A stretch of 63,999 nt of DNA, the filler included, from Octopus bimaculoides (Eukaryota): assembly GCF_001194135.2 (NCBI RefSeq). It is 9 parts of 7 records of this genome, joined end to end, with 100 filler letters (N's around TTAATTAATTAA, not from the genome) between each part and the next. Parts side by side here need not be neighbours in the genome. Positions count along the whole stretch, not along the records: positions 10,826 to 25,185 come from NC_068988.1; 8 more parts are not named here. One strand, given 5' to 3'. Both the position numbers and the translations under genes were made by a program. The stretch's first letter is position 1. Every line of letters begins with the position of its first letter. This document shows positions 9,666-24,149 of the stretch, one piece after another. Under the pieces are notes generated by a model. The model was given only the letters and a program-made list of their open reading frames with translations, ran no database searches and had not been told where the DNA came from.

Positions 9666-10585
9666 TATCTATCTATCTATCTATTTATCTATCTATCTCT
9701 TTGCCAACTGTCTATCTCTTTGCCAACTGACAAACTAGCCAGTCAGTCGTATAATAATGGTGGGGATGGCGGTGTGGTAGAGGTGGTGATGATGGAGATG
9801 GTGGTGGCGGCGGCGGCGGTGGCGGCAGTGGTGGTTGAGGTGGTGGTGACTGCGGTGGCGGCGGGGGCCGTAGTGGTTGTGGTGGTGGCGCTGGTGATGT
9901 ATCAACCCAACATCTGACTCACACTTCATGAGTCTTCTTATAAATATTTCATTCCATTATTACTTCGCACGCCGTTAGACAATTAATAAGATACATTCTC
10001 TCTCCAAAAACAACAATAACAACACCACCAACAACAGCAACAGGGAAAACAATATAATTATAATATATTAAAACGAAAAACCATAAAAACAACAATAACA
10101 ACAACGAAAACATGAAAACAATAAAAACAAAGACAAATTTCTTAATTCTATACTAAAAATTAATATTTCTTTTAAGACAGACACAAATACCTTCCTCTCC
10201 CTCTCTGTGTCATGCACAAACACACACACACAGACACACACACACACACACACACAAACACACACATACACACACACACATACACACACACGCACGAACA
10301 CGCACACACATACACACACACGTACACGCACGCACGCACGCATGCCCACAACAGTACACACGCGCACACATGCATATACAACCGCACACTTACACACACG
10401 CACTCAGACATACACACTCACACTCGCACACACACATACATACACACACACACACACATGCGCACAATAACAGTACACACGCGAAATACGCACATACACA
10501 ATCGTACACAATGAAACACACACCATCACACACACATATCCATCCACACAAATCACACAAACACATATATGCATACATACATACA

Positions 10586-10825: not shown

Positions 10826-10891
<66 letters not shown>

Positions 10892-11466
10892 ACGTATATA
10901 CATATGCGTGTGTGAGTGTGTGTCTATGTATGTGTGGGGGTTATGTGTTATTGCATTTTGCAGCTTAACCGATTTACGTATGTACAATAAGTAGAATATC
11001 GATGTTATATCCTCATCGACCCGTCTGCATTATATTAAGCATTGTCCACGGTTGATCTATGAATTGACTCAAAGGACTTTTGTCTACTTCAGAAAAGAAG
11101 TTTATCTTCTAGCGTGGAGTTTAACTTAAGCTTAGGTTAAGTGTTATTGCTTTTCTTTATATACAGTGAGACTGTTGGATCACTATATTTATATATATAT
11201 ATATATATATNNNNNNNNNNNNNNNNNNNNNNNATATAATATTAGGGAATAAAGTCCAAAACTTACAGGGAAAAAATCAATTTAGCAATACTAAATCAAG
11301 TTTCCCAATATAAAATATATGTATATAATTTAGAGAAAAACCACTATTAAATAATTCAATAAAGAAGAATGTAATTCATACCCTCTATAAAATAAATATA
11401 TCATAAAAACATTATTCAAAAAATCAATAAAATACATAACAGAATAACTAGTAAATGGTATGAAAT

Positions 11467-11597
11467 GACTACGCACGTTTCGTGGCTATATTTTCAAATA
11501 GATAACTACTAAAACAAATTCGATTAATAATTTGATTAATAATAATAAAATCGATCTACAGTTAAATCTATTCAAAAATATAGTTACTCGTCAGGTC
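11467..11597 (-). ncRNA. Type I minimal hammerhead ribozyme candidate with a long stem II (left arm)
   Basis: Minus strand reads GAC-CTGACGA-G...~22-bp stem II...C-GAAAC-GTGC-GTA-GTC. Stem I is GAC/GTC and the cleavage triplet is GUA. Confidence 0.6.
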
Positions 11598-11910
11598 TAA
11601 AATAAAATTAAAAAATAATAATAAAAACAATGTACGCATTGTAACTTATACTAAATATCTAAAAAAAAAAAATACTTATATTAACAATAAATAAATAATC
11701 GAAAAACATTTAACAATATTTCTTAAAATAAAAACACAACTTATCGAAGAATTACGGTAATTCTTCAATTATATGTGTTTTTATTTTAAGAAATATTGTT
11801 AAATGTTTTTCGTTTATTTATTTATTGTTAATACAAGTATTTTTTAGATATTTAGTATAAGTTACAATGCGTACATTGATATTTTAAATTATCATTTTTA
11901 TTTTAATTTA

Positions 11911-12038
11911 GACCTGACGAGTGACTATATTTTTGAATAGATTTAGCTGTAGATCGATTCGATTATTAATTGAATTATTAATCGAATTAGTTTTAGTAGT
12001 TATCTATTTGAAAATATAGCCATGAAACGTGCGTAGTC
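11911..12038 (+). ncRNA. Type I minimal hammerhead ribozyme candidate with a long stem II (right arm)
   Basis: GAC-CTGACGA (11914-11920)-GTGACTATAT...ATATAGCCAT-GAAAC-GTGC-GTA-GTC. Predicted cleavage is after A12035. Confidence 0.55.
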
Positions 12039-12186
12039 ATTTTTTTCCATTTACTAGTTATTCTTTTACGTATTTTATTGATTTTATGAATAAGGTTTTA
12101 TGATATATTTATTTTCTAGAGGGTATGAATTACATTCTTCTTTATTGAATTATTTAATAGTGGTTTTTCTCTAAATTACACACACA

Positions 12187-12278
<92 letters not shown>

Positions 12279-12518
12279 ATCAGTATATGGTTTAACTTAT
12301 TAGACACAGTTCAACATATTCATTCATATTTATGTAATGGAGGAGGTTAGATGTTAAAATGAATTATAGTTTCAATTTTTCATGTTGCTATACAATTTGT
12401 TTCATACCAATAAACTCAGATATTCATAAGTAGAAAATCGTAATAGTCATATTTGTATCCGTCAGTAGCTGATATAAAAAATAAGACAGACGTTAGAAGT
12501 ACACAGACGTTCTCTTAC

Positions 12519-12574
12519 TTATCGTTATGGAATTATTGTATTCGTTCTTGCAGTCATGCCTATTTGAATCAAGG
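12519..12574 (-). other. Candidate small exon downstream of the GRL-like pair
   Basis: Minus strand has acceptor ACTTTTTCAG and donor-like AA|GTAAGA. The phase-1 reading is xLIQIGMTARTNTIIP*. Confidence 0.25.
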
Positions 12575-13199
12575 CTGAAAAAGTATATATTAAGTGGGTG
12601 CTGATATATGTAATATTAAAAACTGACATTCACTCAATGAAATCCAATATTTGTGTGTCTATTTAAAAATTCTTAAATGAATTGCATTACTGATTAAGCT
12701 GTATTTGTATAAAGGTTGTAAAATACCAAGTACCAAATAAGGAGATGAATGAAGTTTCAAATACTAATTTAGTTTTTACTTAACCGTCAATTACCCTTTC
12801 GACTTAAGAAATTTTTAGAAACGATGCTTGTTAATAATAGTATTAAAGAATAATTTCAATTATATTATAAATTTATAATTTAAATATTTATTGTAAATAA
12901 TAGGTCTAATATTCATAGACAAAAATATGTTATATGTCGTAATTGATTATCTAGTCACAGTATTGATATCTTTTAAAGAAAGTTAAGAAATAAATGTGAA
13001 GTATATTTGCCACTTAAATGCGGCTAAACCATAAGGGTGAATGTTACTGTTGCTTTTAGCCCCAGGAGAACATCTCCTCCAGCTGGCTATTGATACACAT
13101 CTGTGCCCTGTCGGTATTTGCANNNNNNNNNNGATACACATCTGTGCCCTGTCGGTATTTGCAAAGGGAAGTCATCCTTCCCATGTTGATCACGTGATA

Positions 13200-13244
13200 C
13201 GCACGGACTCGAGTTTCTGGGTATTTACCCTTCGTCAGCGTACG
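13200..13244 (-). ncRNA. Compact type I minimal hammerhead ribozyme candidate
   Basis: Minus strand: CGTACG CTGACGA A GGGT-AAAT-ACCC A GAAAC TCGA GTC CGTGCG. It has a 6-bp stem I, intact core, palindromic stem III loop and GUC site. Stem II is closed by a non-canonical A.A. Confidence 0.7.
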
Positions 13245-13784
13245 ACAATCACCGATCTTGGATGCGAAGGCGTCCCAATGCAAATACGTATATACTTTTT
13301 CCACTGACGAATATTCACTGATCTCCAAAAAATGAAAACAAGCAATGTTAAAGAAATAAATACTATACGAGTAATAAAGTCTAAATAAAGTGGATTACTT
13401 ACGCTACAAACTTATATAATCAGTTATAGAGGTATTAGTTAACGACAATTTCTTTTTAGTCTATGTCGAAATAGTTGTTTATAATATTGTTGAGTGTGTT
13501 TTAGTAGAAAAAATAAGGAAACAAAAAAGAAAACTGGAGAAGTTTGTTGTAATGTATGGGAGACAATAATTAATATACTTGGATATTTTACGGAAATAAT
13601 ATAGTCACACATAGATTTGCATATACAAACGCAAATAGACTAACAACACAGATATAGAAATAATACAATCAAATTATTTTCTGTCTACAACCAATACAAA
13701 TATATATATATGCGCATACATACCCATACAGCCATATATACATATATATATACACATTTATACATACATAGACACACACACATC

Positions 13785-13823
<39 letters not shown>

Positions 13824-14246
13824 NNNNNNNNNNNNNNNNNNNNNNNNNNNNNNNNNNNNNNNNNNNNNNNNNNNNNNNNNNNNNNNNNNNNNNNNNNNNN
13901 NNNNNNNNNNNNNNNNNNNNNNNNNNNNNNNNNNNNNNNNNNNNNNNNNNNNNNNNNNNNNNNNNNNNNNNNNNNNNNNNNNNNNNNNNNNNNNNNNNNN
14001 NNNNNNNNNNNNNNNNNNNNNNNNNNNNNNNNNNNNNNNNNNNNNNNNNNNNNNNNNNNNNNNNNNNNNNNNNNNNNNNNNNNNNNNNNNNNNNNNNNNN
14101 NNNNNNNNNNNNNNNNNNNNNNNNNNNNNNNNNNNNNNNNNNNNNNNNNNNNNNNNNNNNNNNNNNNNNNNNNNNNNNNNNNNNNNNNNNNNNNNNNNNN
14201 NNNNNNNNNNNNNNNNNNNNNNNNNNNNNNNNNNNNNNNNNNNNNN

Positions 14247-14282
<36 letters not shown>

Positions 14283-14374
14283 ATATATATATATTCATAT
14301 ACATATATACACATACAAATATATACACATTAAAATGTATACACATACATATACATACACCTACATATGTACAG

Positions 14375-14606
14375 TTAACCCATTAAGTCCCACTGTCCTA
14401 TAAATAGGACACTAAATGAGAGCATTAAATAATCTATATCATATTATCTCAGTTTCCTATTTATTGGACACAGAGTATTTTCCATTTCTACTTGAAGTAA
14501 AGGAGTTTTAATAATCATTTTCCCCCTTTTAACCTATTTTCAATCATCTGTAAAAAATTTAAATTAATATTCAGAAATTTAGGCACTCTAGGATTTAATG
14601 GGTTAA
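14375..14606. mobile_element. piggyBac-type MITE
   Basis: TTAA-CCCATTAAGTCC ... GGATTTAATGGG-TTAA: TIRs starting with CCC and a TTAA target duplication. Confidence 0.65.
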
Positions 14607-14793
14607 AAAGAGGTGCCTACACTCCTGTTAATATAGGTATTCATACACGTACACAGGCATAATCATATAAGTACAAGTCCAAATATTCTAAAGCACGTGT
14701 ATATACGCAGATACGACCATGCTCCAAATACTGCAGTGAAGAGGCACAATCTACATAGACACTCACATAGACGGCTACATAGACGCATCCCCC

Positions 14794-14927
<134 letters not shown>

Positions 14928-15353
14928 GTAGCTAGATATGTATATACTAGCTTAAAAGCCCCCCCCCCTCAATCGAGTGGCGTTTAAGCTATTTTATAGC
15001 TTTGAAGCAATTGACACTACATGGGAAGATCTGCGAAAAGATCTCTCACTCGTTGTGGGGGAATTTGTTGTATTTGTTTCCTCCAGAGTCACATCAAATG
15101 ATGATCATATTCGTCGCAAAAAAATAGTGTAAAAAAAACGGGTATAAACATCAAGATTGTTGTCTTAATTCAAAGAATACTTTATGGTTAAACATTCCAT
15201 TTGGTAAATAGGTAAATTACATTTTTTCAAAACGTTTGATATACCAATGAAATAACATTTTCCAATTAATCATATGTATTATCAAATCTTTTACAGACAC
15301 ACACACATATATATGTGTGTGTGCGTGTGTGTGTATGTGTGTCTGTCAGTGTG

Positions 15354-15386
<33 letters not shown>

Positions 15387-15573
15387 GTTTGTGTGTATAT
15401 ATGTATGTATATATAGGGATATATATATACAAGGACACAATATACATATATACTCAAGGACATATACACAATTTGTGTGTGTTTGTATGTGCGTGTGTGT
15501 GTGTGTCCGTGTATATATGTACGGTGATATATACACATACTTGAAATAGAGAACGGTTTTTATGCATAAATAT

Positions 15574-15604
<31 letters not shown>

Positions 15605-15643
15605 AAGAAGAAGAAGAAGAAGAAGAAGAAGAAGAAGAAGAAG

Positions 15644-15674
<31 letters not shown>

Positions 15675-15714
15675 GCAGCAAGATATGGCTAGATAAATAA
15701 ATAAACTGTTAAGA

Positions 15715-15827
15715 ACTGTAGAATGATCAGAAGAGCATTTGCTAATTAAAAATTACTTCTTCTAAAAATCTTGGTAAAGCGAAATTTTGTTTGGCGTCCC
15801 CAAGAGATGTCATACGATGAATTGTAG
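15715..15827 (-). pseudogene. Broken exon 2 of GRL-like gene A
   Basis: Same acceptor context as gene B (pyrimidine tract, TTAG|CTA). It has TGA at codon 6 (15810-15812), a 2-nt insertion and an ~140-bp deletion relative to gene B exon 2. Confidence 0.6.
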
Positions 15828-16040
15828 CTAATTCGCAAAACAAACGTCGAGAAAGAGTGAGTTAATGACGGAATTACAGAATGAGAGTCGAATGGCTATG
15901 AAAAAATTGTCATAGCGGAAGAGAAGGAGGAATTTGTTTTATAAGATATTAGGTAACATTAAAAGAAATCGAAACGAATATAATATATACTATGAAAATA
16001 TATATAAAAAAAAATGAGATTCGAGAATAATGTAACTTAC

Positions 16041-16994
16041 CGATTTATTTAAGCGAAGTCCAATCCAAACCATTCTGATCAAATACATCAAATTCAAAGA
16101 AATCACAAACATAACAGCAGAGTATTCAGTGAATAGATTTTGAAATGAACCATTTATAATCAAGTAAGTTGCAATACAACATCCAGTAATACTACTGAGT
16201 ATGATATATCCCGAAGTCAGCTGAAATGATTCATTCACTAAATTCAGTGTTTTACTCAGAGTATCATGTGAGTTACATATTTCTGTGATCTCTTTATATT
16301 TCTTAAAGAAATACGAAGTGTCTGATTGCTTTTCTTTTACGTACTTCTCAGCCTCGCTCGCTACTTTATTAAACTCATGCTGCAGTGCAGTGCCAGCTTC
16401 AATATTCATATACCAGTCAAGCGTCAGGGACGTAATTGTTATAGTATAAAATACAAAGCGTATTATTAAAAGTATTAAGACAGGACGCTCGATGGTTTTT
16501 AAATGAATTGTTGCGGAACTCCAAGTATTCGTAATGAAAAACGGGAGAATTTGATTAAAAATAGTGATAAGAATAAGAGGCAGCAACATCATTACAAAAA
16601 GAGATATAAAAGAAAACTTTAAGTTATTATTATAGAATATTTTATCGTCTTCATCAAAGGTAAGTTTGGCGAATATATCGATCATTTCTTTGTTTTTAGA
16701 TTTTCTGAAGATTCTGATCAAACAGTAGAGTGAAAGCAAAATATGTAAAAATATTGCGTAAATATGTGCCAATATTCTATCAGTCGTGCTATGATCCAAT
16801 TGTATAATATCAAAAATATATTTAATGGGGTTTACAATCAGATATACGAAGTACATGATATAAAAAGCATTGAAGCAGAGTGTACTACATTTGAGAGACT
16901 TCAACAATGATATGTTGATAATAGATATCCTTAATATATTAATTTTCTCATAAATTTGCAATATTCTATAAAATCGTGTTTCTTTTAGTTCCAT
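16041..16994 (-). CDS. Gustatory-receptor-like (7TM ion channel / 7tm_7-type) chemoreceptor, gene A, exon 1 (318 codons, TM1-TM6)
   Basis: Open frame with six hydrophobic segments. The amphipathic TM4-TM5 loop is ALQHEFNKV...CNSHDTLSKTLNLVNESF (GR-type L..F.......H..L......N..F pattern). TM6 ends W-I-G-L-R-L-N-K-S. Phase-0 donor TCG|GTAAGT. The family call is by pattern recognition, not a database search. Confidence 0.8.
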
Positions 16995-17049
16995 AATTTT
17001 TGCAATTGTGTATTTTTAACAAGTTGTGTAAAGAGTGAAACTCGCTCAC

Positions 17050-17300
17050 TTAAAACACACAAGCTGTATTTCTATGTATGATCTGTAGTTCTATAATGAG
17101 TTGCGAGTGTTGCAATGCTTCGTTTGTCACGAAAGACCTGGCAATAAAGAATGACCTGCCAACATATCTGTTATATAATGTCATCTGCATTGTTTGGACG
17201 TAGGGATTATTTCAAATCTGTTCTTATGGACTTAAGATATATATATATCAAATTAGATATAGATAACTAAGCTTCTTAAAACCCATGAATCGTAAATGCG
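17050..17300 (-). promoter_or_regulatory. Conserved upstream/promoter block of GRL-like gene A
   Basis: TTATATAA at 17171-17178 (177 bp from the ATG) and TAATCCC on the sense strand at 17203-17209. Alignable to 24150-24445 and 24845-25143. Confidence 0.6.
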
Positions 17301-17468
17301 TTATATTAAATCCAGGACGATGAATATAAATAAAAAATGTATATGTATATATATATNNNNNNNNNNNNNNNNNNNNNNNNNNNNNNNNNNNNNNNNNNNT
17401 ATATATACATACATATATATACATGTATATATACATATGTATATACACACACACACACATATATATAT

Positions 17469-17500
<32 letters not shown>

Positions 17501-17588
17501 GCATGCATATATATATACATATACATTTATATGCATACATATATATACATATATATGCATATATATACATATATATATATGCATATAT

Positions 17589-17665
<77 letters not shown>

Positions 17666-17992
17666 TATACACGCATAGACATATATATATATATACGTAT
17701 ACACACATATAGGGTTTATGCTTGACACTAATCTGCCCTACATTTGATTTTCGCAACACAATAACGAGATGAGGATATCGACGTAATATTAATATCCATT
17801 ATTTTGTATTGTATCAAACGTGGTTTCCAGATTGAGGTGTGTTGAGTAAAAGATCTATCAGTCACATAAAAGAAGCTTTCTCTTTTTCCCAATGAATATA
17901 TTAGCGTGAAATTTAACGCTAAGATAGCTTCTTACGTAGGAGCATTGTATTAGTTATATACTCTTATACAATTGTACATGCAAACATACATC

Positions 17993-18054
<62 letters not shown>

Positions 18055-18078
18055 NNNNNNNNNNNNNNNNNNNNNNNN

Positions 18079-18157
<79 letters not shown>

Positions 18158-18161
18158 CACA

Positions 18162-18830
18162 CAGGGTGTGGTCAATAAACTGTAGTCTGAATTACGGAAA
18201 AATGAAATGAACACTGACATCTGATTTTGACAGATATTTTTCTAACCAAAATTGCATAAAAGTGTATTCAAATATTACAGAGTAAAGATATTCAATAAAA
18301 TCGCCATTGTCTTCAACCACGACCTCCAGATGGTTTCGCAATCTCCTGCAACTCCTCTGGACGGTCTCCTTGTTTATATTGGTGAATGCTGCCATAACCC
18401 TTGCTTTCAGTTCATCTTTGGTGTTACATGGAGTTTTGTTGGTCTCTTGCTCAACTGCATCCCACACATAATAATCAAGGTGTTTGCAGTCTGGGGAATT
18501 AGGTGGCCAGATGTTAGGGGTGATGTGCCTGCAGAAATTATCTGACAGCCATGACTGTGTTCCCCTGCTAATGTGGCATAGTGCAGAATTCTTTTGCCAG
18601 ATATAGGGCCTTCCAGTAGCCACCCTCTTGACCCAGAGCAGCACTAATGCCTCCAGACACTTAATGTAGGCCACCGTGTTGAGTCTGAGGCCATGTAGGA
18701 AGATGAATAGGAGCATAACGTCACCATCACTAGTGATCACTCCGAAGACCATGATGTCTACTGGATGTGTCCACTGGCTGTTGTGCGGTAAAGCAAACCT
18801 CGAGAGAACAGAGCAATGGTATGAGCACAA
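18162..18830 (-). mobile_element. maT (DD37D-type) Tc1/mariner transposase 3' half with terminal repeat
   Basis: IMVFGVITSDG, WQKNSA..H, WPPNSPDCKHLDYYVW. A CAGGGTGTGGTCAATAAAC end lies at 18162. Confidence 0.85.
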
Positions 18831-18995
18831 ACCAGAAGGAGTAATGTAAAACGAACATTACAAATTAGCTGAACAGTTTTTCTACAATAAATCTAAAAGA
18901 TGAGTACTGTAAAGAGTGATAAATTAGAAGAACTGGCATTCTTTGCTGCAATATTTTAAGTAAAAAGTTTCTTATTCTTTACTTGAAGTAATAGT

Positions 18996-20215
18996 TTGTC
19001 CTATACTTTTACAAATGTAATAACTTATCCTGTACAAGCCGCCACAATTGGATTGGCCAAATATCTTCAAACAACCAACGATTGNNNNNNNNNNNNNNNN
19101 NNNNNNNNNNNNNNNNNNNNNNNNNNNNNNNNNNNNNNNNNNNNNNNNNNNNNNNNNNNNNNNNNNNNNNNNNNNNNNNNNNNNNNNNNNNNNNNNNNNN
19201 NNNNNNNNNNNNNNNNNNNNNNNNNNNNNNNNNNNNNNNNNNNNNNNNNNNNNNNNNNNNNNNNNNNNNNNNNNNNNNNNNNNNNNNNNNNNNNNNNNNN
19301 NNNNNNNNNNNNNNNNNNNNNNNNNNNNNNNNNNNNNNNNNNNNNNNNNNNNNNNNNNNNNNNNNNNNNNNNNNNNNNNNNNNNNNNNNNNNNNNNNNNN
19401 NNNNNNNNNNNNNNNNNNNNNNNNNNNNNNNNNNNNNNNNNNNNNNNNNNNNNNNNNNNNNNNNNNNNNNNNNNNNNNNNNNNNNNNNNNNNNNNNNNNN
19501 NNNNNNNNNNNNNNNNNNNNNNNNNNNNNNNNNNNNNNNNNNNNNNNNNNNNNATCAGGGGTTACGAAGTTCAGGGCTAAAAGCAGAGAGTGAAGGTTTC
19601 ATATTGGCTGCTCAAGACCAAAGCTTATTAACCCGGAACTACCAAGCCAATGTGATAAAAAATGGAGCTGACCTACAATGCCGATTCTGTAACGATGCGA
19701 TTGAAACTATAGACCACCTAATCTCAGGGTGTAGAGTCTTAGCACCTGTAGAATATAAAGCAAGACATGACAGAGTCGGCCAGTATTTACACTGGACAAT
19801 ATGTCGGCATTATAAATTCAAAACCGCTGACAAATGGTATAAACACCATCCTGAAGCTGTGACTGAGAGAGAAAATGTATCGCATCTCTGGGACTTCCCC
19901 GTACATACCGACAAATCTATAAAAACTAATAAACTGGATATTATTATAAAAGATCAGACAAAAAAGAGGTGTTTATTGATTGACATGAGTATTCCTTGCG
20001 ATCATAATATAGCGGCGAAATAATTTGACAAGAATTGCTATTAGAAATTGAAAAAATGTGGCATCTCAAGGCGACTACCGTACCAGTGATTGTAGGATCT
20101 CTAAGAAAGATTAAAAAAAGGGTACTGAAACCTATTTGAAAATGATACTAGGCCTACTATCCCTACAGAAAGTGCAAAAATTCGTGTTAACTGGAACAAC
20201 TTATGTACTGAGAAG
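18996..20215 (+). mobile_element. R4/Dong-like RLE non-LTR retrotransposon 3' fragment
   Basis: GLKAESEGFILAAQDQSL, CCHC knuckle CRFC...ETIDHLISGC, RHDRV, and restriction-like endonuclease LWDF...KLDII...LIDMSIP. Confidence 0.9.
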
Positions 20216-20410
20216 AGCATTATCGCTGTGAAAACAACATCCATTCTTGAATTTATTTATTTATTAATTTTTTTTTGCATACATATTTTACCTGTGAATT
20301 TGCGTGTGTAAACTGGAAATGCATACAATGAGCTTCTCTGCCCTAGGTGTACGGAAAACACTCGGCGAGAAATGGAAGAAAATTTGAAGAAAGAAGAAAA
20401 AAAAAACAAC

Positions 20411-20465
<55 letters not shown>

Positions 20466-20589
20466 ACAGTGAGAGAAGAAACATAGAATATTTGGTAAAC
20501 AGCAAAAAATCATGTTACATTATGCCGCTAGTGCAGAAGTAGTTAACAAAAATGGACTTGTGATTGCTCATAAATTCCAATCAAGAACA

Positions 20590-21430
20590 GTCAACGAGAA
20601 ACCCTACTCTATATGGAATTACATGGTCAGTTTCACCGTGAAACCAACAAATTCAAAGACCATAAAGCACCATGGAGGCGTCTCAACAAGGGTGACCTAA
20701 GAAAGAATACTGAAAGCTTAATCATCGCGGTCGAGGAGCATGCATTGAATACCAGCTCAATGAAAAAGAATATATACCACACAAGTGCATTGGACCTTTG
20801 CAGATTGTGTGTGAAGAGGGTCGAAAGCGTGACTCACATGGTTAGTGCTTGTGAAAGACTTACACAGAAACAGTACAAGCATAGACTCGACAAAGTAGCC
20901 CCAAACCTCCACTGGCTACTGTGCCTTAAGTATGGCTATGAGGTCGCTGATGCTTGGTGCCAACATACACCGGGAAAGGTAACGGACGAAAATGGGAAAG
21001 CAAAAATCTCCTGGGACTTTGATTTCCAGACAAAGTATTAGAGTATAGAAGGCCAGATATAGTAACCTTTAGGAGGAAAAACAAAAGCGCCTAATAATCG
21101 ACGAAACAGTGTCAGGGGGTCAAAACATCATTATGAAAGAAAGAGAAAAAGTTGATAAATATGGAGACCTGAAAATTGAGATCGCTAAGATGTGGCAGCT
21201 ACGAGAGTCGAACATAAAGATTATCCCTATTGTCATCGGAGCATTGGGTTCAATACCACCCGATCTGAAAAAAACATCTGAAAACTTTAGAAATACCCTA
21301 CAATCTAGGTGTATTGCAAAAGTCGGCATTACTTGGAATTACACGCATACTGCGCAAAGTACTCTCTGTCTGAGGTCCTTGATGTGACATAACAAACATT
21401 ACAAACCCCCGGTAGACAAAATATCTTCAA
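20590..21430 (+). mobile_element. Second R4/Dong-like RLE LINE 3' fragment
   Basis: GDLRKNTESLIIAVEEHAL, CRLC...ESVTHMVSAC, WDFDFQT, KYGDLKIEIAKMW, IPIVIGALG. Preceded by (AAT)n at 20412-20462. Confidence 0.85.
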
Positions 21431-21479
21431 TGAACAACCTCACAATACTGTGCAACGTCTATAAAAATAATAATAATGA

Positions 21480-22060
21480 GGAAGATTTGAAGGATGCTAG
21501 GGAACTGAAATGTCAAATGGGAAAACAATGAGAGCGGTTGAGAAACAGCAGAGGTATAAGTGCTTGGGAATACTGGGAGCATACGAGATAATAAATGAAG
21601 AAACTATACAAATTACCAGCAGGGAATACACAAAGAGAGGCAAGAAACTATTGCAATCAAAACTGAATTCCAAAAATCTTATGGAAGCAATAAATTCAAG
21701 AACAGTTTACCGTAATCAGATATAGAGTTGGAATTATAGACTGGATCAGAAACGATATAAAGAAATTTGACAGAAAAATTAGGAAGCTGTTGACGATGTA
21801 TGGAGCCCATCATCCGAAGAGGCTTAAATAGCAGTAGAAGAATGTGTACCGATGGAAAGGAAATGTTTAGTAAAGTATTTATGGAACACCACAGACAAAC
21901 TACGAAAGACAGTTAATAAAGAACAGGTGATGGGAGTGCGTAATAGGAGAAAAGGGCAAGAAGGGGATACATGGGAACACGTAAGACTTTGCTGTTTGTC
22001 ATTTCAGTGTCAATGAAGAAAGTACCAGTTGAATACTGGAGTTGAAGCAAGCGACTTACC
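21480..22060 (+). mobile_element. R4/Dong-like LINE internal fragment (post-RT region)
   Basis: YKCLGILG...REYTKRGKKLLQSKLNSKNLMEAINS...FDRKIRKLLTMYGAHHPK. Followed by (TTA)n at 22087-22150. Confidence 0.75.
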
Positions 22061-22086
22061 CTTCTGCCAAAATTTAGGCCTTGAGA

Positions 22087-22152
<66 letters not shown>

Positions 22153-22697
22153 AAGTCTTATCTTTCATCACGGGCTTTCACTGCACTACCGAGCGCAGCT
22201 CTGTGTGCCTTGGGTATGTGCTGTGGTTTCTTGTGGTGATCTTATTTTCTCTGTATTAAAAACGTTTTACGTAGGATTATTGTTATTTTGCAGTTGTTTA
22301 TGTTGTTTTTTTAATTAAAAGAATAAGGGGGAAGAGAAAGTTGAAAAAGAAGATGGAAAGGAGGAAAGAAAGAAAGAAAGAAAGAAGGAAGAACAGAAAC
22401 GAACACTATTAGGAAATGCAGAAATATCAGAAAAGCATTATCAAATTAAAAATGATGTCATCCAAGAGAAGGAGGGGAAGGAGAAGAAGAAGAAGAAGAA
22501 GAAGAAGAAGAAGAAGAAGNNNNNNNNNNAAGAAGAAGAAGAAGAAGAAGAAGAAGAAGAAGAAGAAGAAGAAAATTACTAGGAAATGCAAAATGATCCA
22601 AAACGCATTTCGTAAATTAAAAATGACGTCTTCCAAAAATTCTGTTTAACACATCAATCAATGTTATTCAAGTTATTAGAATGTTGTTCAGTGTGTC

Positions 22698-22838
22698 CTA
22701 AAAATAAAGCCTTTGCTGGAACGAGACAATAATGCATCCATGTGAATAGTTTTCCAGCCCCTCAATCAAGCCTTCTGCATTTCTTGGATAAGCGAGATTT
22801 TGTGTGGCGTCCCTAAGACGTTTTACGATGAATGGTAG
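22698..22838 (-). CDS. GRL-like gene B, predicted exon 2 (46 codons to a TAG; no recognisable intact TM7 motif)
   Basis: Pyrimidine-rich acceptor CTTAG|CTA, in phase with exon 1. Reads LPFIVKRLRDATQNLAYPRNAEGLIEGLENYSHGCIIVSFQQRLYF*. Confidence 0.55.
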   Translation of the reverse strand, partial: LPFIVKRLRDATQNLAYPRNAEGLIEGLENYSHGCIIVSFQQRLYF

Positions 22839-23144
22839 CTAAGTCCGACGACCAAGAGAGAGAAAGTGTGAATGAAGGAATGATGGAATAAGAGAATGAG
22901 TAGAATGCCTGTAGGGATAATAGCTATACTCTGGTAGAGATGGAAGATTTTCATCCATTATTTCAGATCTGTCTGAGGTTCACATTTGGGAAACAAAAGA
23001 TGAAAGACGGATGTCGGAAGATAAGATATCACATTAGTTTAAAACACCAATGGAATTGGGATAACATATTCGACATATTTTATGATGTAATATGTCAAAT
23101 AAAATTAAAATAAAACTACGATTATATATAATTATATAGCTTAC

Positions 23145-24095
23145 CGATTCATTTAAACGAACTCCAATCCACAGCATTCTGATCAAAAGTAACATGTTCC
23201 ACGAAGCCAGAAACATAACGAAAACGTAATCAGAGAGTATAATGTTTAATGAGTCATTTATAATCATATAAGTAGCAACACAACATGCAGCAATACTAAT
23301 GAACGCGATCAATCCCAAAGACAATTGAAATGACTCATTTACTAAATTCAGTGTTTTACTCAGAGTATCATGTAAGTTACATATTTCGGGAATCTCTTTA
23401 TATTTCTTAAAGAAATACGAAGTATTAGATTGCTTTTCTTTTACGTATTTCTCAGCTTCGCTCGCTACTTTATTAAACTCATACTGCAGTGCAGCCCCAA
23501 TTGCTGTATTGATATACCAATCAAATAGCATGCCCGTGAGTGATATACAATCAAATACAACGTGAGTTAATGCAATAATTAAGCCATGATTTTTGCTTGT
23601 TTCTAAATGAATTGTTGAGGAAACCAAATCAGAGCTCAGGAAAAACGGGAGAACGTAGTTCATAATAGTGAGTAAAATAGGCGGCAGCAATATCACTATA
23701 GAAAGTGATATAAAAGAAAATATTAAGTTATTGTTATAGAATTTTTCATCGTCTTCTTCAATTGTAAGTTCGGTAAATGCTTCGAGGATTTCTTTCTCTT
23801 TAGATTTTCTGAAGAATTTGATCAGACAGTAAAGTGAAAGCAAACACTGAAGAAACAGTGCATAAATATATACGAATATTCTATCAGTTTCGCTATGATA
23901 CAATTCTATTATATCATACGTATATATAATGGGGTTCATTATCAGATATACCGAATACAGGATATAAAAGGCAGAGATACAGATAGTGTTACAGTTGAGA
24001 GATTTCAGTTTTACGCTGATAAGTGATATTTTAGAAATATTAATTTTCCCATAAAATTGTAACATTTTATAGAATCGTGTTTCTTTTAGTTCCAT
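23145..24095 (-). CDS. Gustatory-receptor-like (7TM ion channel / 7tm_7-type) chemoreceptor, gene B, exon 1 (317 codons, TM1-TM6)
   Basis: Colinear paralogue of 16041-16994, with the same MELKETRFY start and a near-identical TM4-TM5 loop. Phase-0 donor TCG|GTAAGC at the same codon. Confidence 0.8.
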
Positions 24096-24149
24096 AATTT
24101 TGTAATTTGCTATTACTCACAAGTTACTTCTATATAACACGTTGAACTA

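What the first reader, a model, noticed from the sequence alone, without database searches (positions are those of the whole stretch)
15990..24095. Tandem pair of gustatory-receptor-like (7TM ion-channel) chemoreceptor genes in a probable cephalopod genome
Seen: two colinear ~318-codon ORFs with six hydrophobic segments, an amphipathic TM4-TM5 loop with the L..F....H..L...N..F pattern, and a phase-0 intron right after TM6. Established: insect Gr/Or and non-insect GRL proteins share this topology and a phase-0 intron at about this position; they are ligand-gated cation channels, not GPCRs. Inference: this is part of a lineage-specific GRL expansion. Cephalopod chemosensation is usually discussed in terms of nAChR-derived chemotactile receptors, IRs and GPCRs, and I know of no characterised cephalopod GRL cluster.
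Basis: partly seen in the sequence, partly recalled or inferred. Interest (0 to 1): 0.85.

Follow-up and report, generated by a model that had tools for sequence, protein, structure and literature searches.

The report
Octopus taste-receptor-like exons, alternative first exons
Two intact 318-codon exons in an octopus genome encode the first six membrane helices of insect-type gustatory-receptor-like ion channels, and they are most likely alternative first exons of one gene sharing a final pore helix, a layout so far described only in insects.

Summary
Two minus-strand ORFs (exon A 16994..16041, exon B 24095..23145) have 318 and 317 codons, six hydrophobic segments and identical phase-0 tcg|gtaag donors. 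No assembly gap touches them.

The Gr/GRL assignment is supported, mostly through relatives. The window proteins score only marginally on Pfam 7tm_7 (11 bits). Close octopus paralogues pass the cutoff. A family profile retrieves only 43 proteins from 1.84 billion, and 19 of the 28 distant ones are 7tm_7. The AlphaFold model of a full-length paralogue matches only insect Gr/Or/Orco structures (top 21 hits, TM 0.43-0.62). K+R counts put the N-terminus inside the cell.

"Tandem pair of genes" is probably wrong. No TM7 exon lies between or after the two ORFs. In O. sinensis, five such exons precede one set of three small phase-0 exons, and three predicted isoforms join different large exons to that set. 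O. vulgaris has at least nine copies in 68 kb with no TM7 exon. This is the Drosophila Gr39a/Gr28b layout.

The constant exons lie outside the piece. This is a new member of known kinds and moderately interesting.

The parts
23145..24095 (-). Variable exon B: ATG plus 317 codons encoding the N-terminus and TM1-TM6 of a GRL subunit
   Evidence: ORF and sequence. 62% aa identity to A. 7tm_7 match of 11.1 bits covering residues 30-316, equal to profile positions 22-293 of 370. Six hydrophobic segments. AF2 model with pLDDT 69, whose only real structural matches are Or/Gr/Orco at TMq 0.44-0.64. No N.
23139..23144 (-). Phase-0 splice donor of exon B (gtaagc)
   Evidence: Sequence. The same LN(K/E)S|GTAAGT junction occurs in every O. 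sinensis and O. vulgaris copy.
16041..16994 (-). Variable exon A: ATG plus 318 codons encoding the N-terminus and TM1-TM6 of a GRL subunit
   Evidence: ORF and sequence. 41% identity to O. sinensis P0002 over its full length. Six hydrophobic segments. K+R count of 23 to 3 favours a cytoplasmic N-terminus. No N.
16035..16040 (-). Phase-0 splice donor of exon A (gtaagt)
   Evidence: Sequence. Conserved junction.
24152..24443 (-). Conserved ~290-bp element directly 5' of exon B; candidate exon-specific promoter region
   Evidence: Aligns to the 5' flank of A and to the 5' flanks of four O. vulgaris variable exons at 75-87% identity. Found only in that position.
17055..17312 (-). The same conserved element directly 5' of exon A
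24852..25142 (-). Second, distal copy of the upstream element, 93% identical to the proximal copy of B, with no exon behind it
   Evidence: It is 86.6% identical to O. vulgaris L002 44234-44470, which is higher than the ~78% seen in coding sequence.
22467..22910 (-). Intron patches downstream of exon B that are shared with A (A: 15591-15897), including a (CTT)n microsatellite; marks the 3' end of the duplicated unit
   Evidence: blastn of A against B, 70-74% identity. Sequence.
16995..23144 (-). Interval from B's donor to A's ATG (6150 nt, 546 N): no TM7 or constant exon. Under the proposed model it is part of the long first intron of B-initiated transcripts. It carries transposon debris.
   Evidence: tblastn, motif and HMM searches are negative (best E = 1), while controls on L001 score 1e-8 to 1e-15. 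Tc1/mariner fragment and zf-RVT fragments.

Best explanation
The two ORFs are two variable first exons of a gustatory-receptor-like (GRL; Pfam 7tm_7; seven-TM ion-channel fold) locus in an octopod genome.

**What each exon carries.** Each has its own start codon and a conserved ~290-bp 5' flank, which is probably its own promoter (inferred). Each encodes the cytoplasmic N-terminus and TM1-TM6, and ends in a phase-0 donor.

**How a transcript is completed (inferred from O. sinensis, not seen here).** A transcript that starts at one variable exon splices over any downstream variable exons. It joins one shared set of three small phase-0 exons, which encode the TM6-TM7 linker and TM7 with the TYhhhhhQ signature. 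For this window those constant exons would lie beyond the piece's edge, below coordinate 10826 on the minus-strand downstream side.

**What the locus would produce.** A family of subunits with different TM1-6, the part that forms the ligand pocket in insect Gr/Or structures, and an identical TM7, the pore-lining and tetramer-forming helix. By analogy with insect Gr/Or these would be tetrameric ligand-gated cation channels used in chemosensation.

**Shown:** exon anatomy, homology and fold, absence of TM7 exons in the piece, and the shared-exon architecture in relatives.

**Inferred:** that this particular locus is spliced that way, promoter choice, channel function and a chemosensory role.
For: **Anatomy.** Both exons have an ATG, 318 or 317 codons and a tcg|gtaag phase-0 donor, with no gaps inside.

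**Family.**
- Pfam 7tm_7 scores are 30.3 and 27.4 bits (cutoff 26.6) for the octopus paralogues P0009 and P0010, 25.1 for P0007 and 11.1 for window B. All matches are colinear.
- The family profile finds 43 hits in 1.84e9 proteins. Of the 28 distant ones, 19 are 7tm_7, 15 are Trehalose_recp and 3 are 7tm_6, with no other membrane family.
- Named relatives include Lottia 'Gustatory receptor' and Haliotis 'gustatory receptor for sugar taste 61a/64a-like'.

**Fold.**
- The P0002 model (pTM 0.68) gives Foldseek ranks 1-21 that are all BmGr9, Gr43a, Gr64a, Orco, MhOR5 or Ag/AaOR. Probability is 1.00 and TM 0.43-0.62. Rank 22 drops to probability <=0.16.
- The window exon B model shows the same pattern by TM-score.

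**Topology.** K+R counts are 23:3 for A and 21:2 for B, which puts the N-terminus inside.

**Architecture.**
- No TM7 or constant exon is found in the piece by tblastn, motif or HMM (best E = 1). The L001 control gives 1.2e-14 and 1.3e-8.
- O. sinensis L001 has 5 intact variable exons plus 1 truncated one, followed by a single constant set of 69, 90 and 57 nt, all with phase-0 introns.
- Isoforms X1, X2 and X3 of LOC118764608 join three different variable exons to that set. The variable parts map exactly onto L001.
- The same pattern holds for LOC118764607 and for O. bimaculoides LOC106880719.
- The O. vulgaris 68-kb array has at least 9 copies, intact and decayed, and no constant exon.

**Constraint.**
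- dN/dS is 0.3-0.8.
- B is closer to O. vulgaris copies (dS 0.26-0.30) than to A (dS 0.38), so both exons appear to have been kept intact since before that split.
- The conserved 5' element is found only in front of variable exons.
Against: - The constant exons of this locus were not seen, because they would lie outside the piece.
- The O. sinensis and O. bimaculoides isoforms are computational NCBI models. X2 and X3 are short (141 aa, starting at internal Met), so full-length use of those variable exons is not demonstrated.
- A 469-N gap (19085-19553) between B and A could hide one small exon.
- The window proteins themselves do not reach the Pfam cutoff (B 11 bits, A no hit). Foldseek E-values are modest: 6e-3 at best for P0002 and 0.18 at best among Gr/Or matches for window B.
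- The C-terminal ~60 residues of the P0002 model have pLDDT <50.
- dN/dS up to 0.8 is also compatible with weak constraint.
Confidence: 0.7

Rival explanations
1. A and B are two complete, independent tandem GRL genes, each with its own private TM7 exons.
For: - Each exon has its own ATG and its own conserved 5' flank.
- Tandem arrays of complete genes are the commonest form of chemoreceptor expansion (established knowledge).
- Gene A's 3' exons could lie beyond 10826.
- Assembly gaps exist between B and A.
Against: - No TM7 or constant exon lies in the 6150 nt between B's donor and A's ATG. Three methods agree, and the controls are positive.
- In O. sinensis the three constant exons span 2.9 kb, so a 469-N gap could not hide them.
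- Arrays in O. sinensis and O. vulgaris have no interleaved TM7 exons.
- Annotated isoforms share one constant set.
Confidence: 0.12
2. The ORFs are non-functional relics. Only the large exon was duplicated in tandem, and these copies are not expressed, or not spliced into a complete receptor.
For: - The O. vulgaris array contains several decayed copies, with a premature stop at 19978 and frameshifted fragments at 39.5, 46.4 and 58 kb. Exon death therefore happens in this family.
- dN/dS is 0.6-0.8 against the closest copies.
- No expression data could be obtained.
- The window exons have no match above 62% among 15 billion predicted proteins.
Against: - Both ORFs are fully open over 318 codons in 70% A+T DNA (P about 8e-11 each).
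- Both keep the ATG, the perfect donor, all six TM segments and the conserved loop motif.
- dS of 0.26-0.38 to the nearest copies means ample time for stops to accumulate.
- The 5' element is conserved.
Confidence: 0.13
3. The proteins are not Gr/GRL at all. They belong to another multi-pass membrane family, such as a GPCR or a transporter, and the 7tm_7 signal is compositional.
For: - The direct Pfam hit is below threshold (E 0.25) for B and absent for A.
- A profile search of PDB sequences found nothing.
- Foldseek E-values never reach 1e-3.
Against: - Paralogues pass the curated 7tm_7 cutoff with colinear alignments.
- In the reciprocal profile search, 19 of 28 distant hits are 7tm_7 and no other membrane family appears.
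- Foldseek ranks 1-21 are exclusively Gr/Or/Orco, followed by a sharp drop.
- The N-terminus is inside the cell, opposite to GPCRs.
- The family-typical phase-0 3' introns and the TY.....Q TM7 motif are present in relatives.
Confidence: 0.03

Closest known systems
Drosophila Gr39a, and likewise Gr28b and Gr23a: insect Gr loci with alternative large 5' exons and shared small 3' exons (PMC2204066; beetle Grs in PMC6720082)
   Same: [quoted passage not shown] The octopus loci have 5 to 9 or more large exons (ATG through TM1-6, ~318 codons) and three small conserved exons of 69, 90 and 57 nt. Both belong to the same protein family (7tm_7). Both show exon duplication, pseudogenisation and loss within the array.
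   Different: The octopus loci are in a mollusc, not an arthropod. In the searchable library this layout is reported only in insects. The octopus arrays are longer and spread over tens of kb, with transposons between exons. For the window itself, the constant exons and the splicing were not observed.
Octopus sinensis LOC118764608 (P0002, XP isoforms X1-X3) with neighbouring LOC118764607 and LOC118764606; O. bimaculoides LOC106880719; the O. vulgaris array on OX597821.1
   Same: These are the closest sequence relatives (41-72% aa). They share the exon size, the LN(K/E)S|GTAAGT junction and the N-terminal 'ME.KETRFYK.LQ.Y' start.
   Different: The window's exons are not identical, or even more than 72% identical, to any copy found. 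They therefore come from another species or from unannotated paralogues. All database entries are named 'uncharacterized protein'.
Insect Gr/Or/Orco channels with solved structures (BmGr9 8vc2, DmGr43a 8jm9, Gr64a 8jme, Orco 6c70, MhOR5 7lic, AgOR28 8v3d)
   Same: They share the fold of the predicted model (TM 0.43-0.64), including long cytoplasmic extensions of TM4-6. The N-terminus is inside the cell. TM7 carries a TY.....Q motif in the octopus constant exon.
   Different: Sequence identity is only 10-14%. The motif ends QT and not QF in the octopus constant exon. Channel activity and ligands are untested.
Molluscan GRLs (Lottia gigantea 'Gustatory receptor' V4C6X0; Haliotis, Littorina, Acanthosepion pharaonis predicted proteins)
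   Same: The octopus family profile retrieves them at E 1e-4 to 1e-11. They share the C-terminal block ..LF..RL....IG....G.F.I......L...G...TY..V.IQ.
   Different: They are distant (13-25% identity). I did not examine whether they use alternative first exons.
Clustered protocadherin and UGT1A loci of vertebrates (variable first exons, each with its own promoter, plus constant exons)
   Same: They share the same gene logic: tandem variable first exons, each preceded by a conserved promoter-like element, with no acceptor site, spliced to shared constant exons. This rests on established knowledge and is an analogy only.
   Different: The protein families are unrelated. Promoter choice in octopus is untested.

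Membership tests
Gr/GRL family (Pfam 7tm_7, PF08395; seven-TM ion-channel superfamily) | The window's own proteins reach the curated 7tm_7 profile score | tested here: not met
   Exon B scores 11.1 bits (E 0.25) against a cutoff of 26.6, although the match is colinear over residues 30-316, equal to profile positions 22-293 of 370. Exon A has no hit. The exons lack the TM7 part of the profile.
Gr/GRL family (Pfam 7tm_7, PF08395; seven-TM ion-channel superfamily) | Homology to 7tm_7 through close relatives and a reciprocal profile search | tested here: met
   P0009 scores 30.3 bits, P0010 27.4 bits and P0021 31.7 bits, all at or above 26.6. P0007 scores 25.1. The family profile retrieves 43 hits in 1.84e9 proteins. 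Of the 28 distant hits, 19 are 7tm_7, 15 are Trehalose_recp and 3 are 7tm_6.
Gr/GRL family (Pfam 7tm_7, PF08395; seven-TM ion-channel superfamily) | Orco/Gr fold | tested here: met
   For the P0002 model, Foldseek PDB ranks 1-21 are all Gr/Or/Orco, with probability 1.00 and TM 0.43-0.62. For window exon B, only Gr/Or/Orco give TMq 0.44-0.64. Caveats: E-values are 6e-3 or worse, model pLDDT is 68-69, and TM7 is poorly modelled.
Gr/GRL family (Pfam 7tm_7, PF08395; seven-TM ion-channel superfamily) | Seven TM helices with an intracellular N-terminus | tested here: inconclusive
   Six TM segments are present in each exon. K+R counts of 23:3 and 21:2 place the N-terminus inside. The seventh TM is not encoded in the piece.
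Gr/GRL family (Pfam 7tm_7, PF08395; seven-TM ion-channel superfamily) | TM7 motif (TYhhhhhQF) | not testable with these tools
   The TM7 exon is absent from the piece. In relatives the shared exon reads ..GSFITYILVVIQTKPL, so T, Y and Q are conserved and F is replaced by T.
Gr/GRL family (Pfam 7tm_7, PF08395; seven-TM ion-channel superfamily) | [quoted passage not shown] | tested here: met
   Both window exons end in a phase-0 donor just after TM6. In O. sinensis all three 3' introns are phase 0. Benton et al. 2020 list this feature as defining. I did not compare exact positional equivalence with insect introns.
Gr/GRL family (Pfam 7tm_7, PF08395; seven-TM ion-channel superfamily) | Ligand-gated cation channel activity | not testable with these tools
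   This needs heterologous expression and electrophysiology.
Alternative-first-exon Gr locus (Gr39a/Gr28b type) | Several large tandem same-strand exons, each with its own ATG and a donor in the same phase | tested here: met
   Window exons A and B. Five or more copies in O. sinensis and nine or more in O. vulgaris.
Alternative-first-exon Gr locus (Gr39a/Gr28b type) | No 3' (TM7) exons between the large exons | tested here: met
   tblastn, motif and HMM searches of the piece are negative, with positive controls. Caveat: 546 N lie between B and A.
Alternative-first-exon Gr locus (Gr39a/Gr28b type) | One shared set of small constant exons downstream of the array | not testable with these tools
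   For the window it would lie beyond the piece's edge. In O. sinensis L001 it is present at 46673-46741, 47649-47738 and 49533-49589.
Alternative-first-exon Gr locus (Gr39a/Gr28b type) | Transcripts that join different large exons to the same constant exons | not testable with these tools
At annotation level in relatives, the feature is met: X1, X2 and X3 of LOC118764608 use three different variable exons.
Rhodopsin-like or other GPCRs (considered and rejected) | Extracellular N-terminus, GPCR profile or fold match | tested here: not met
   No GPCR Pfam family appears at E<=10. Positive-inside counts put the N-terminus inside the cell. The only GPCR entry in the Foldseek list is rank 44, with probability 0.08 and TM 0.16.

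The most novel reading that the evidence does not exclude
Octopods may have evolved a protocadherin-like 'variable exon plus constant exon' GRL cluster, either independently of insects or retained from a protostome ancestor. In this reading, promoter choice among a dozen or more variable exons gives individual sensory cells, for example in suckers or the olfactory organ, distinct ligand-binding modules on a common pore helix. That would be a third, so far overlooked, ionotropic chemoreceptor system in cephalopods, beside the nAChR-derived chemotactile receptors and the IRs.
Probability: 0.2. Interest if true: 0.75.

Novelty: new member of a known kind. Interest (0 to 1): 0.55.

Why it matters
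Cephalopod chemosensation is currently explained by nAChR-derived chemotactile receptors, IRs and GPCRs. The reviews I could read do not mention GRLs in cephalopods.

This finding shows that octopods carry an expanded, fast-evolving array of insect-type seven-TM ion-channel receptor modules. It also shows that the array is organised like the complex Gr39a/Gr28b loci of flies: many alternative ligand-side modules on one shared pore helix.

That gives concrete candidates for expression mapping and channel assays. It also raises an evolutionary question: is this gene layout ancestral to protostome Grs, or convergent?

The claim is limited in three ways. GRLs are already known in molluscs. The octopus relatives are already predicted, though unnamed, in NCBI annotation. 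No expression or function is shown.

Tried and rejected
1. **blastn between the two downstream regions** to find conserved 3' exons. It returned only microsatellite matches.
2. **Searches for a TM7 or constant exon in the piece**, by tblastn of the P0002 C-terminus, a TY.....Q regular expression and a TM7-region HMM. No exon was found. The weak hits at 11.5 and 11.9 kb are the two arms of a palindrome, not an exon.
3. **Profile search of PDB sequences** with the family alignment. Nothing relevant turned up; the best hits were a PLP enzyme and an nAChR fragment at E>=0.5.
4. **RNA and DNA read evidence.** Splicing and species identity remain untested.
5. **The look-up of encoding contigs for P0007 and P0008.** They are not on record because only the longest isoform is indexed.
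6. **Third large protein search, using the 71-aa constant region,** meant to list all isoforms. It returned only one protein, P0062.
7. **Whether the conserved 5' element is a dispersed repeat.** Rejected: it occurs only directly upstream of variable exons.
8. **GPCR or transporter identity.** Rejected.
9. **Pfam scan of longer stretches of the transposon-like region.** This failed because of stop codons, and I did not pursue it.

Full report
**Observation.** The piece (10826-25185) contains two minus-strand ORFs at 15990..16994 (334 aa) and 23034..24095 (353 aa). Both start MELKETRFY and are 62% identical over their length (E 1e-146). Each ORF passes through an identical junction..LN(K/E)S tcg|gtaag. 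After it, similarity between the two copies decays and a stop follows within 16 or 36 codons. Reading that junction as a splice donor gives exon A = 16994..16041 (954 nt) and exon B = 24095..23145 (951 nt). That is 318 and 317 codons, and both introns are phase 0. The chance of 318 open codons at this composition (70% A+T) is about 8e-11. Each exon has six hydrophobic segments. The loop before TM5 carries HDTLSKTLNLVNESF.

**Gaps.** I tested these first, as asked. No N lies in either exon or ORF. All four gaps inside the finding's range lie between the exons. The gaps at 17357-17399, 18055-18078 and 22520-22529 sit in microsatellites. Only 19085-19553 (469 N) lies in complex sequence. The exons are sound, but the 6150-nt distance between them is an estimate.

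**Family.** Direct Pfam evidence is weak. Exon B scores 11.1 bits on 7tm_7 (E 0.25, cutoff 26.6), although the match is colinear over profile positions 22-293 of 370. Exon A gives no hit. The indirect evidence is strong.
- The only close relatives among 5.8 billion clustered proteins are Octopus sequences. Among them, P0009 (30.3 bits) and P0010 (27.4) pass the curated 7tm_7 cutoff, P0007 scores 25.1 and P0011 scores 22.5. Always, the large exon maps to the first ~290 profile positions and the C-terminus to positions ~293-367.
- An exhaustive HMMER profile search of 1.84 billion representatives found only 43 proteins at E<=1e-3. Of the 28 distant ones, 19 match 7tm_7 (best 7e-23), 15 match Trehalose_recp and 3 match 7tm_6. 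No other membrane family appears.
- Named relatives include Lottia gigantea 'Gustatory receptor', Haliotis 'gustatory receptor for sugar taste 61a-like' and '64a-like', Littorina, and the cuttlefish Acanthosepion pharaonis.

**Fold and topology.** An AlphaFold2 model of the full-length O. sinensis relative P0002 has pLDDT 68 and pTM 0.68, and its last ~60 residues are poor. Foldseek against the PDB gave ranks 1-21 that are exclusively insect Gr/Or/Orco cryo-EM structures (BmGr9, Gr43a, Gr64a, Orco, MhOR5, AgOR28, AaOR10). Probability is 1.00, TM is 0.43-0.62 and the alignments are full-length. Rank 22 falls to probability <=0.16 and TM <=0.25. The model of the window's own exon B (pLDDT 69) has weak E-values. 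Even so, only Gr/Or/Orco structures overlap it: TMq 0.44-0.64, against <=0.26 for the ABC transporters that interleave by E-value. K+R counts of 23:3 (A) and 21:2 (B) place the N-terminus in the cytoplasm. That is the Gr/Or topology and the opposite of GPCRs. Benton et al. 2020 list the defining GRL features as seven TMs with an intracellular N-terminus, a TM7 motif and conserved 3' introns. They also note that GRLs are already known in Mollusca.

**Two genes, or two exons of one gene?** A Gr needs TM7, and the exons end right after TM6.
- I searched the piece for the missing part with tblastn of the P0002 C-terminus, with per-exon peptides and a TY.....Q motif scan, and with an HMM built from 27 molluscan GRL C-termini against six-frame translations.
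- Nothing was found (best E = 1). The same searches on the O. sinensis locus scored 1e-8 to 1e-15. The weak hits at 11.5 and 11.9 kb are two arms of a palindrome.
- So exon B has no TM7 exon in the 6150 nt before exon A begins. Exon A has none in the 5215 nt to the piece's edge.

**The O. sinensis locus explains why.**
- P0002 (LOC118764608 isoform X1) is encoded over 39.6 kb.
- Locus L001 carries five intact large exons and one truncated one in tandem on one strand, starting at 1457, 6109 (truncated), 10001, 16398, 27576 and 42321. Each intact exon runs ATG, ~318 codons, LN(K/R/T)S|GTRAGT.
- They are followed by a single set of three small exons at 46673-46741, 47649-47738 and 49533-49589 (69, 90 and 57 nt). 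A unique GT-AG solution makes all three introns phase 0. The last exon encodes MIGSFITYILVVIQTKPL.
- X1 uses the exon at 10001 and skips three others. The variable parts of X2 (P0011) and X3 (P0012) map exactly to 17145-17354 and 28302-28511, and both continue into the same constant exons.
- LOC118764607 (X2-X4) and O. bimaculoides LOC106880719 (X2, X3) show the same pattern.
- In O. vulgaris, a 68-kb stretch holds four intact copies, one with a premature stop, and four fragments. All lie on the same strand and keep the same donor, and no constant exon occurs anywhere.

[quoted passage not shown] All such reports in the searchable library are from insects.

**The repeat unit in the window.** A and B align at 76% over 1.3 kb, from ~318 bp upstream of the ATG to just past the donor. 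They align again in intron patches that include a (CTT)n microsatellite. The ~290-bp 5' element occurs only directly upstream of variable exons, both in the window and in O. vulgaris, where it is 75-87% identical to the window. The distal copy upstream of B matches O. vulgaris at 84-87%, above the ~78% of coding sequence. I read it as a candidate promoter for each exon; that is an inference. B has a second copy, 93% identical, about 700 bp further upstream.

**Constraint and history.** Exon B is 70-72% identical in protein to three O. vulgaris copies (dS 0.26-0.30) and 63% to A (dS 0.38). The A/B split therefore seems older than the species split, and both exons have stayed open since. dN/dS is 0.3-0.8, typical of fast-evolving chemoreceptors but also compatible with weak constraint. 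Neither exon has a match above 72% anywhere, so the source is an octopod other than the assemblies sampled, or these are unannotated paralogues.

**Mechanism proposed.** Transcription starts at one variable exon. Downstream variable exons would need to lack an acceptor at their 5' end, by analogy with other alternative-first-exon loci; I did not test this. The donor would then join the first constant exon. The products differ in TM1-6, the part that forms the ligand pocket in insect Gr/Or structures. They share TM7, the pore-lining and tetramer-core helix. The roles of these parts come from established knowledge of Orco, MhOR5 and BmGr9. Their application here is inference. Channel function and a chemosensory role are inferred from family membership only.

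**Limits.**
There is no transcript evidence for this locus, and the species is unidentified.
- The isoforms in relatives are NCBI computational models, and X2 and X3 are N-terminally short.
- The constant exons of this locus lie outside the piece.
- A 469-N gap could hide one small exon, but not a set that spans 2.9 kb in O. sinensis.

**Verdict.**
- The Gr/GRL assignment is supported (about 0.9).
- 'Tandem pair of genes' is better replaced by 'two alternative variable first exons of a Gr39a-like complex GRL locus' (about 0.7).
- Both the protein family and the gene architecture are known kinds. What is new is their presence, size and organisation in octopods, which the literature I could search does not describe.

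Noticed in passing
window 11320-12184: A large near-perfect palindrome about 865 bp long. Its arms are 11320-11755 and 11757-12184, 92-97% complementary and centred on 11756, downstream of exon A. It could be a foldback element or an assembly artefact. Part of it (11260-11435) also matches the O. vulgaris array region at 73% (L002 27338-27520).
   Followed up: partly
window 13123-13132: The 10-N gap is flanked on both sides by the same 31-mer (GATACACATCTGTGCCCTGTCGGTATTTGCA). It looks like an unmerged overlap between contigs, not missing sequence.
   Followed up: no
window 18195-18830 (-): A 212-aa ORF matches the catalytic domain of Sleeping Beauty (Tc1/mariner) transposase at E 4.5e-4. It has no Pfam hit. 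It is a transposon fragment lying between the two variable exons.
   Followed up: partly
window 19556-20020, 20613-21038, 21109-21384 (+): The first two ORFs, on the strand opposite the receptor exons, have weak zf-RVT hits (zinc-binding region of reverse transcriptases; E 9e-4 and 9e-3). The third has only a chance-level TPR_DOCK hit (E 0.03). They are probably retrotransposon debris. The 469-N gap cuts the first one.
   Followed up: no
window 24852-25142 (-): An extra copy of the exon-proximal 5' element lies about 700 bp upstream of B's own copy and is 93% identical to it. No exon follows it. It is more similar to O. vulgaris (86.6%) than the coding exon is (~78%). It could be a duplicated promoter, or the remnant of a unit that lost its exon.
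   Followed up: partly
window 15560-15680 and 22460-22575 (-): A (CTT)n/(GTT)n microsatellite sits at the equivalent position in the intron after both exons, so it was part of the duplicated unit. The 10-N gap at 22520-22529 lies inside it.
   Followed up: no
L002 (O. vulgaris OX597821.1:107184675-107253054), gene model P0004: The annotated 'hypothetical predicted protein' (360 aa) is a chimera. It joins a transposon-like N-terminus, a TM3-4 fragment of one variable exon, and the start of the next variable exon. The array is mis-annotated in that genome.
   Followed up: partly
L001 constant exon 2 (46673-46741) and isoforms P0008, P0009, P0010: Isoforms of O. sinensis LOC118764607 either include or skip the 14-residue stretch VHSITRSIHYMQFQ between TM6 and the DIKPEVVAK segment. 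This suggests an alternative acceptor or a cassette in the TM6-TM7 linker.
   Followed up: no
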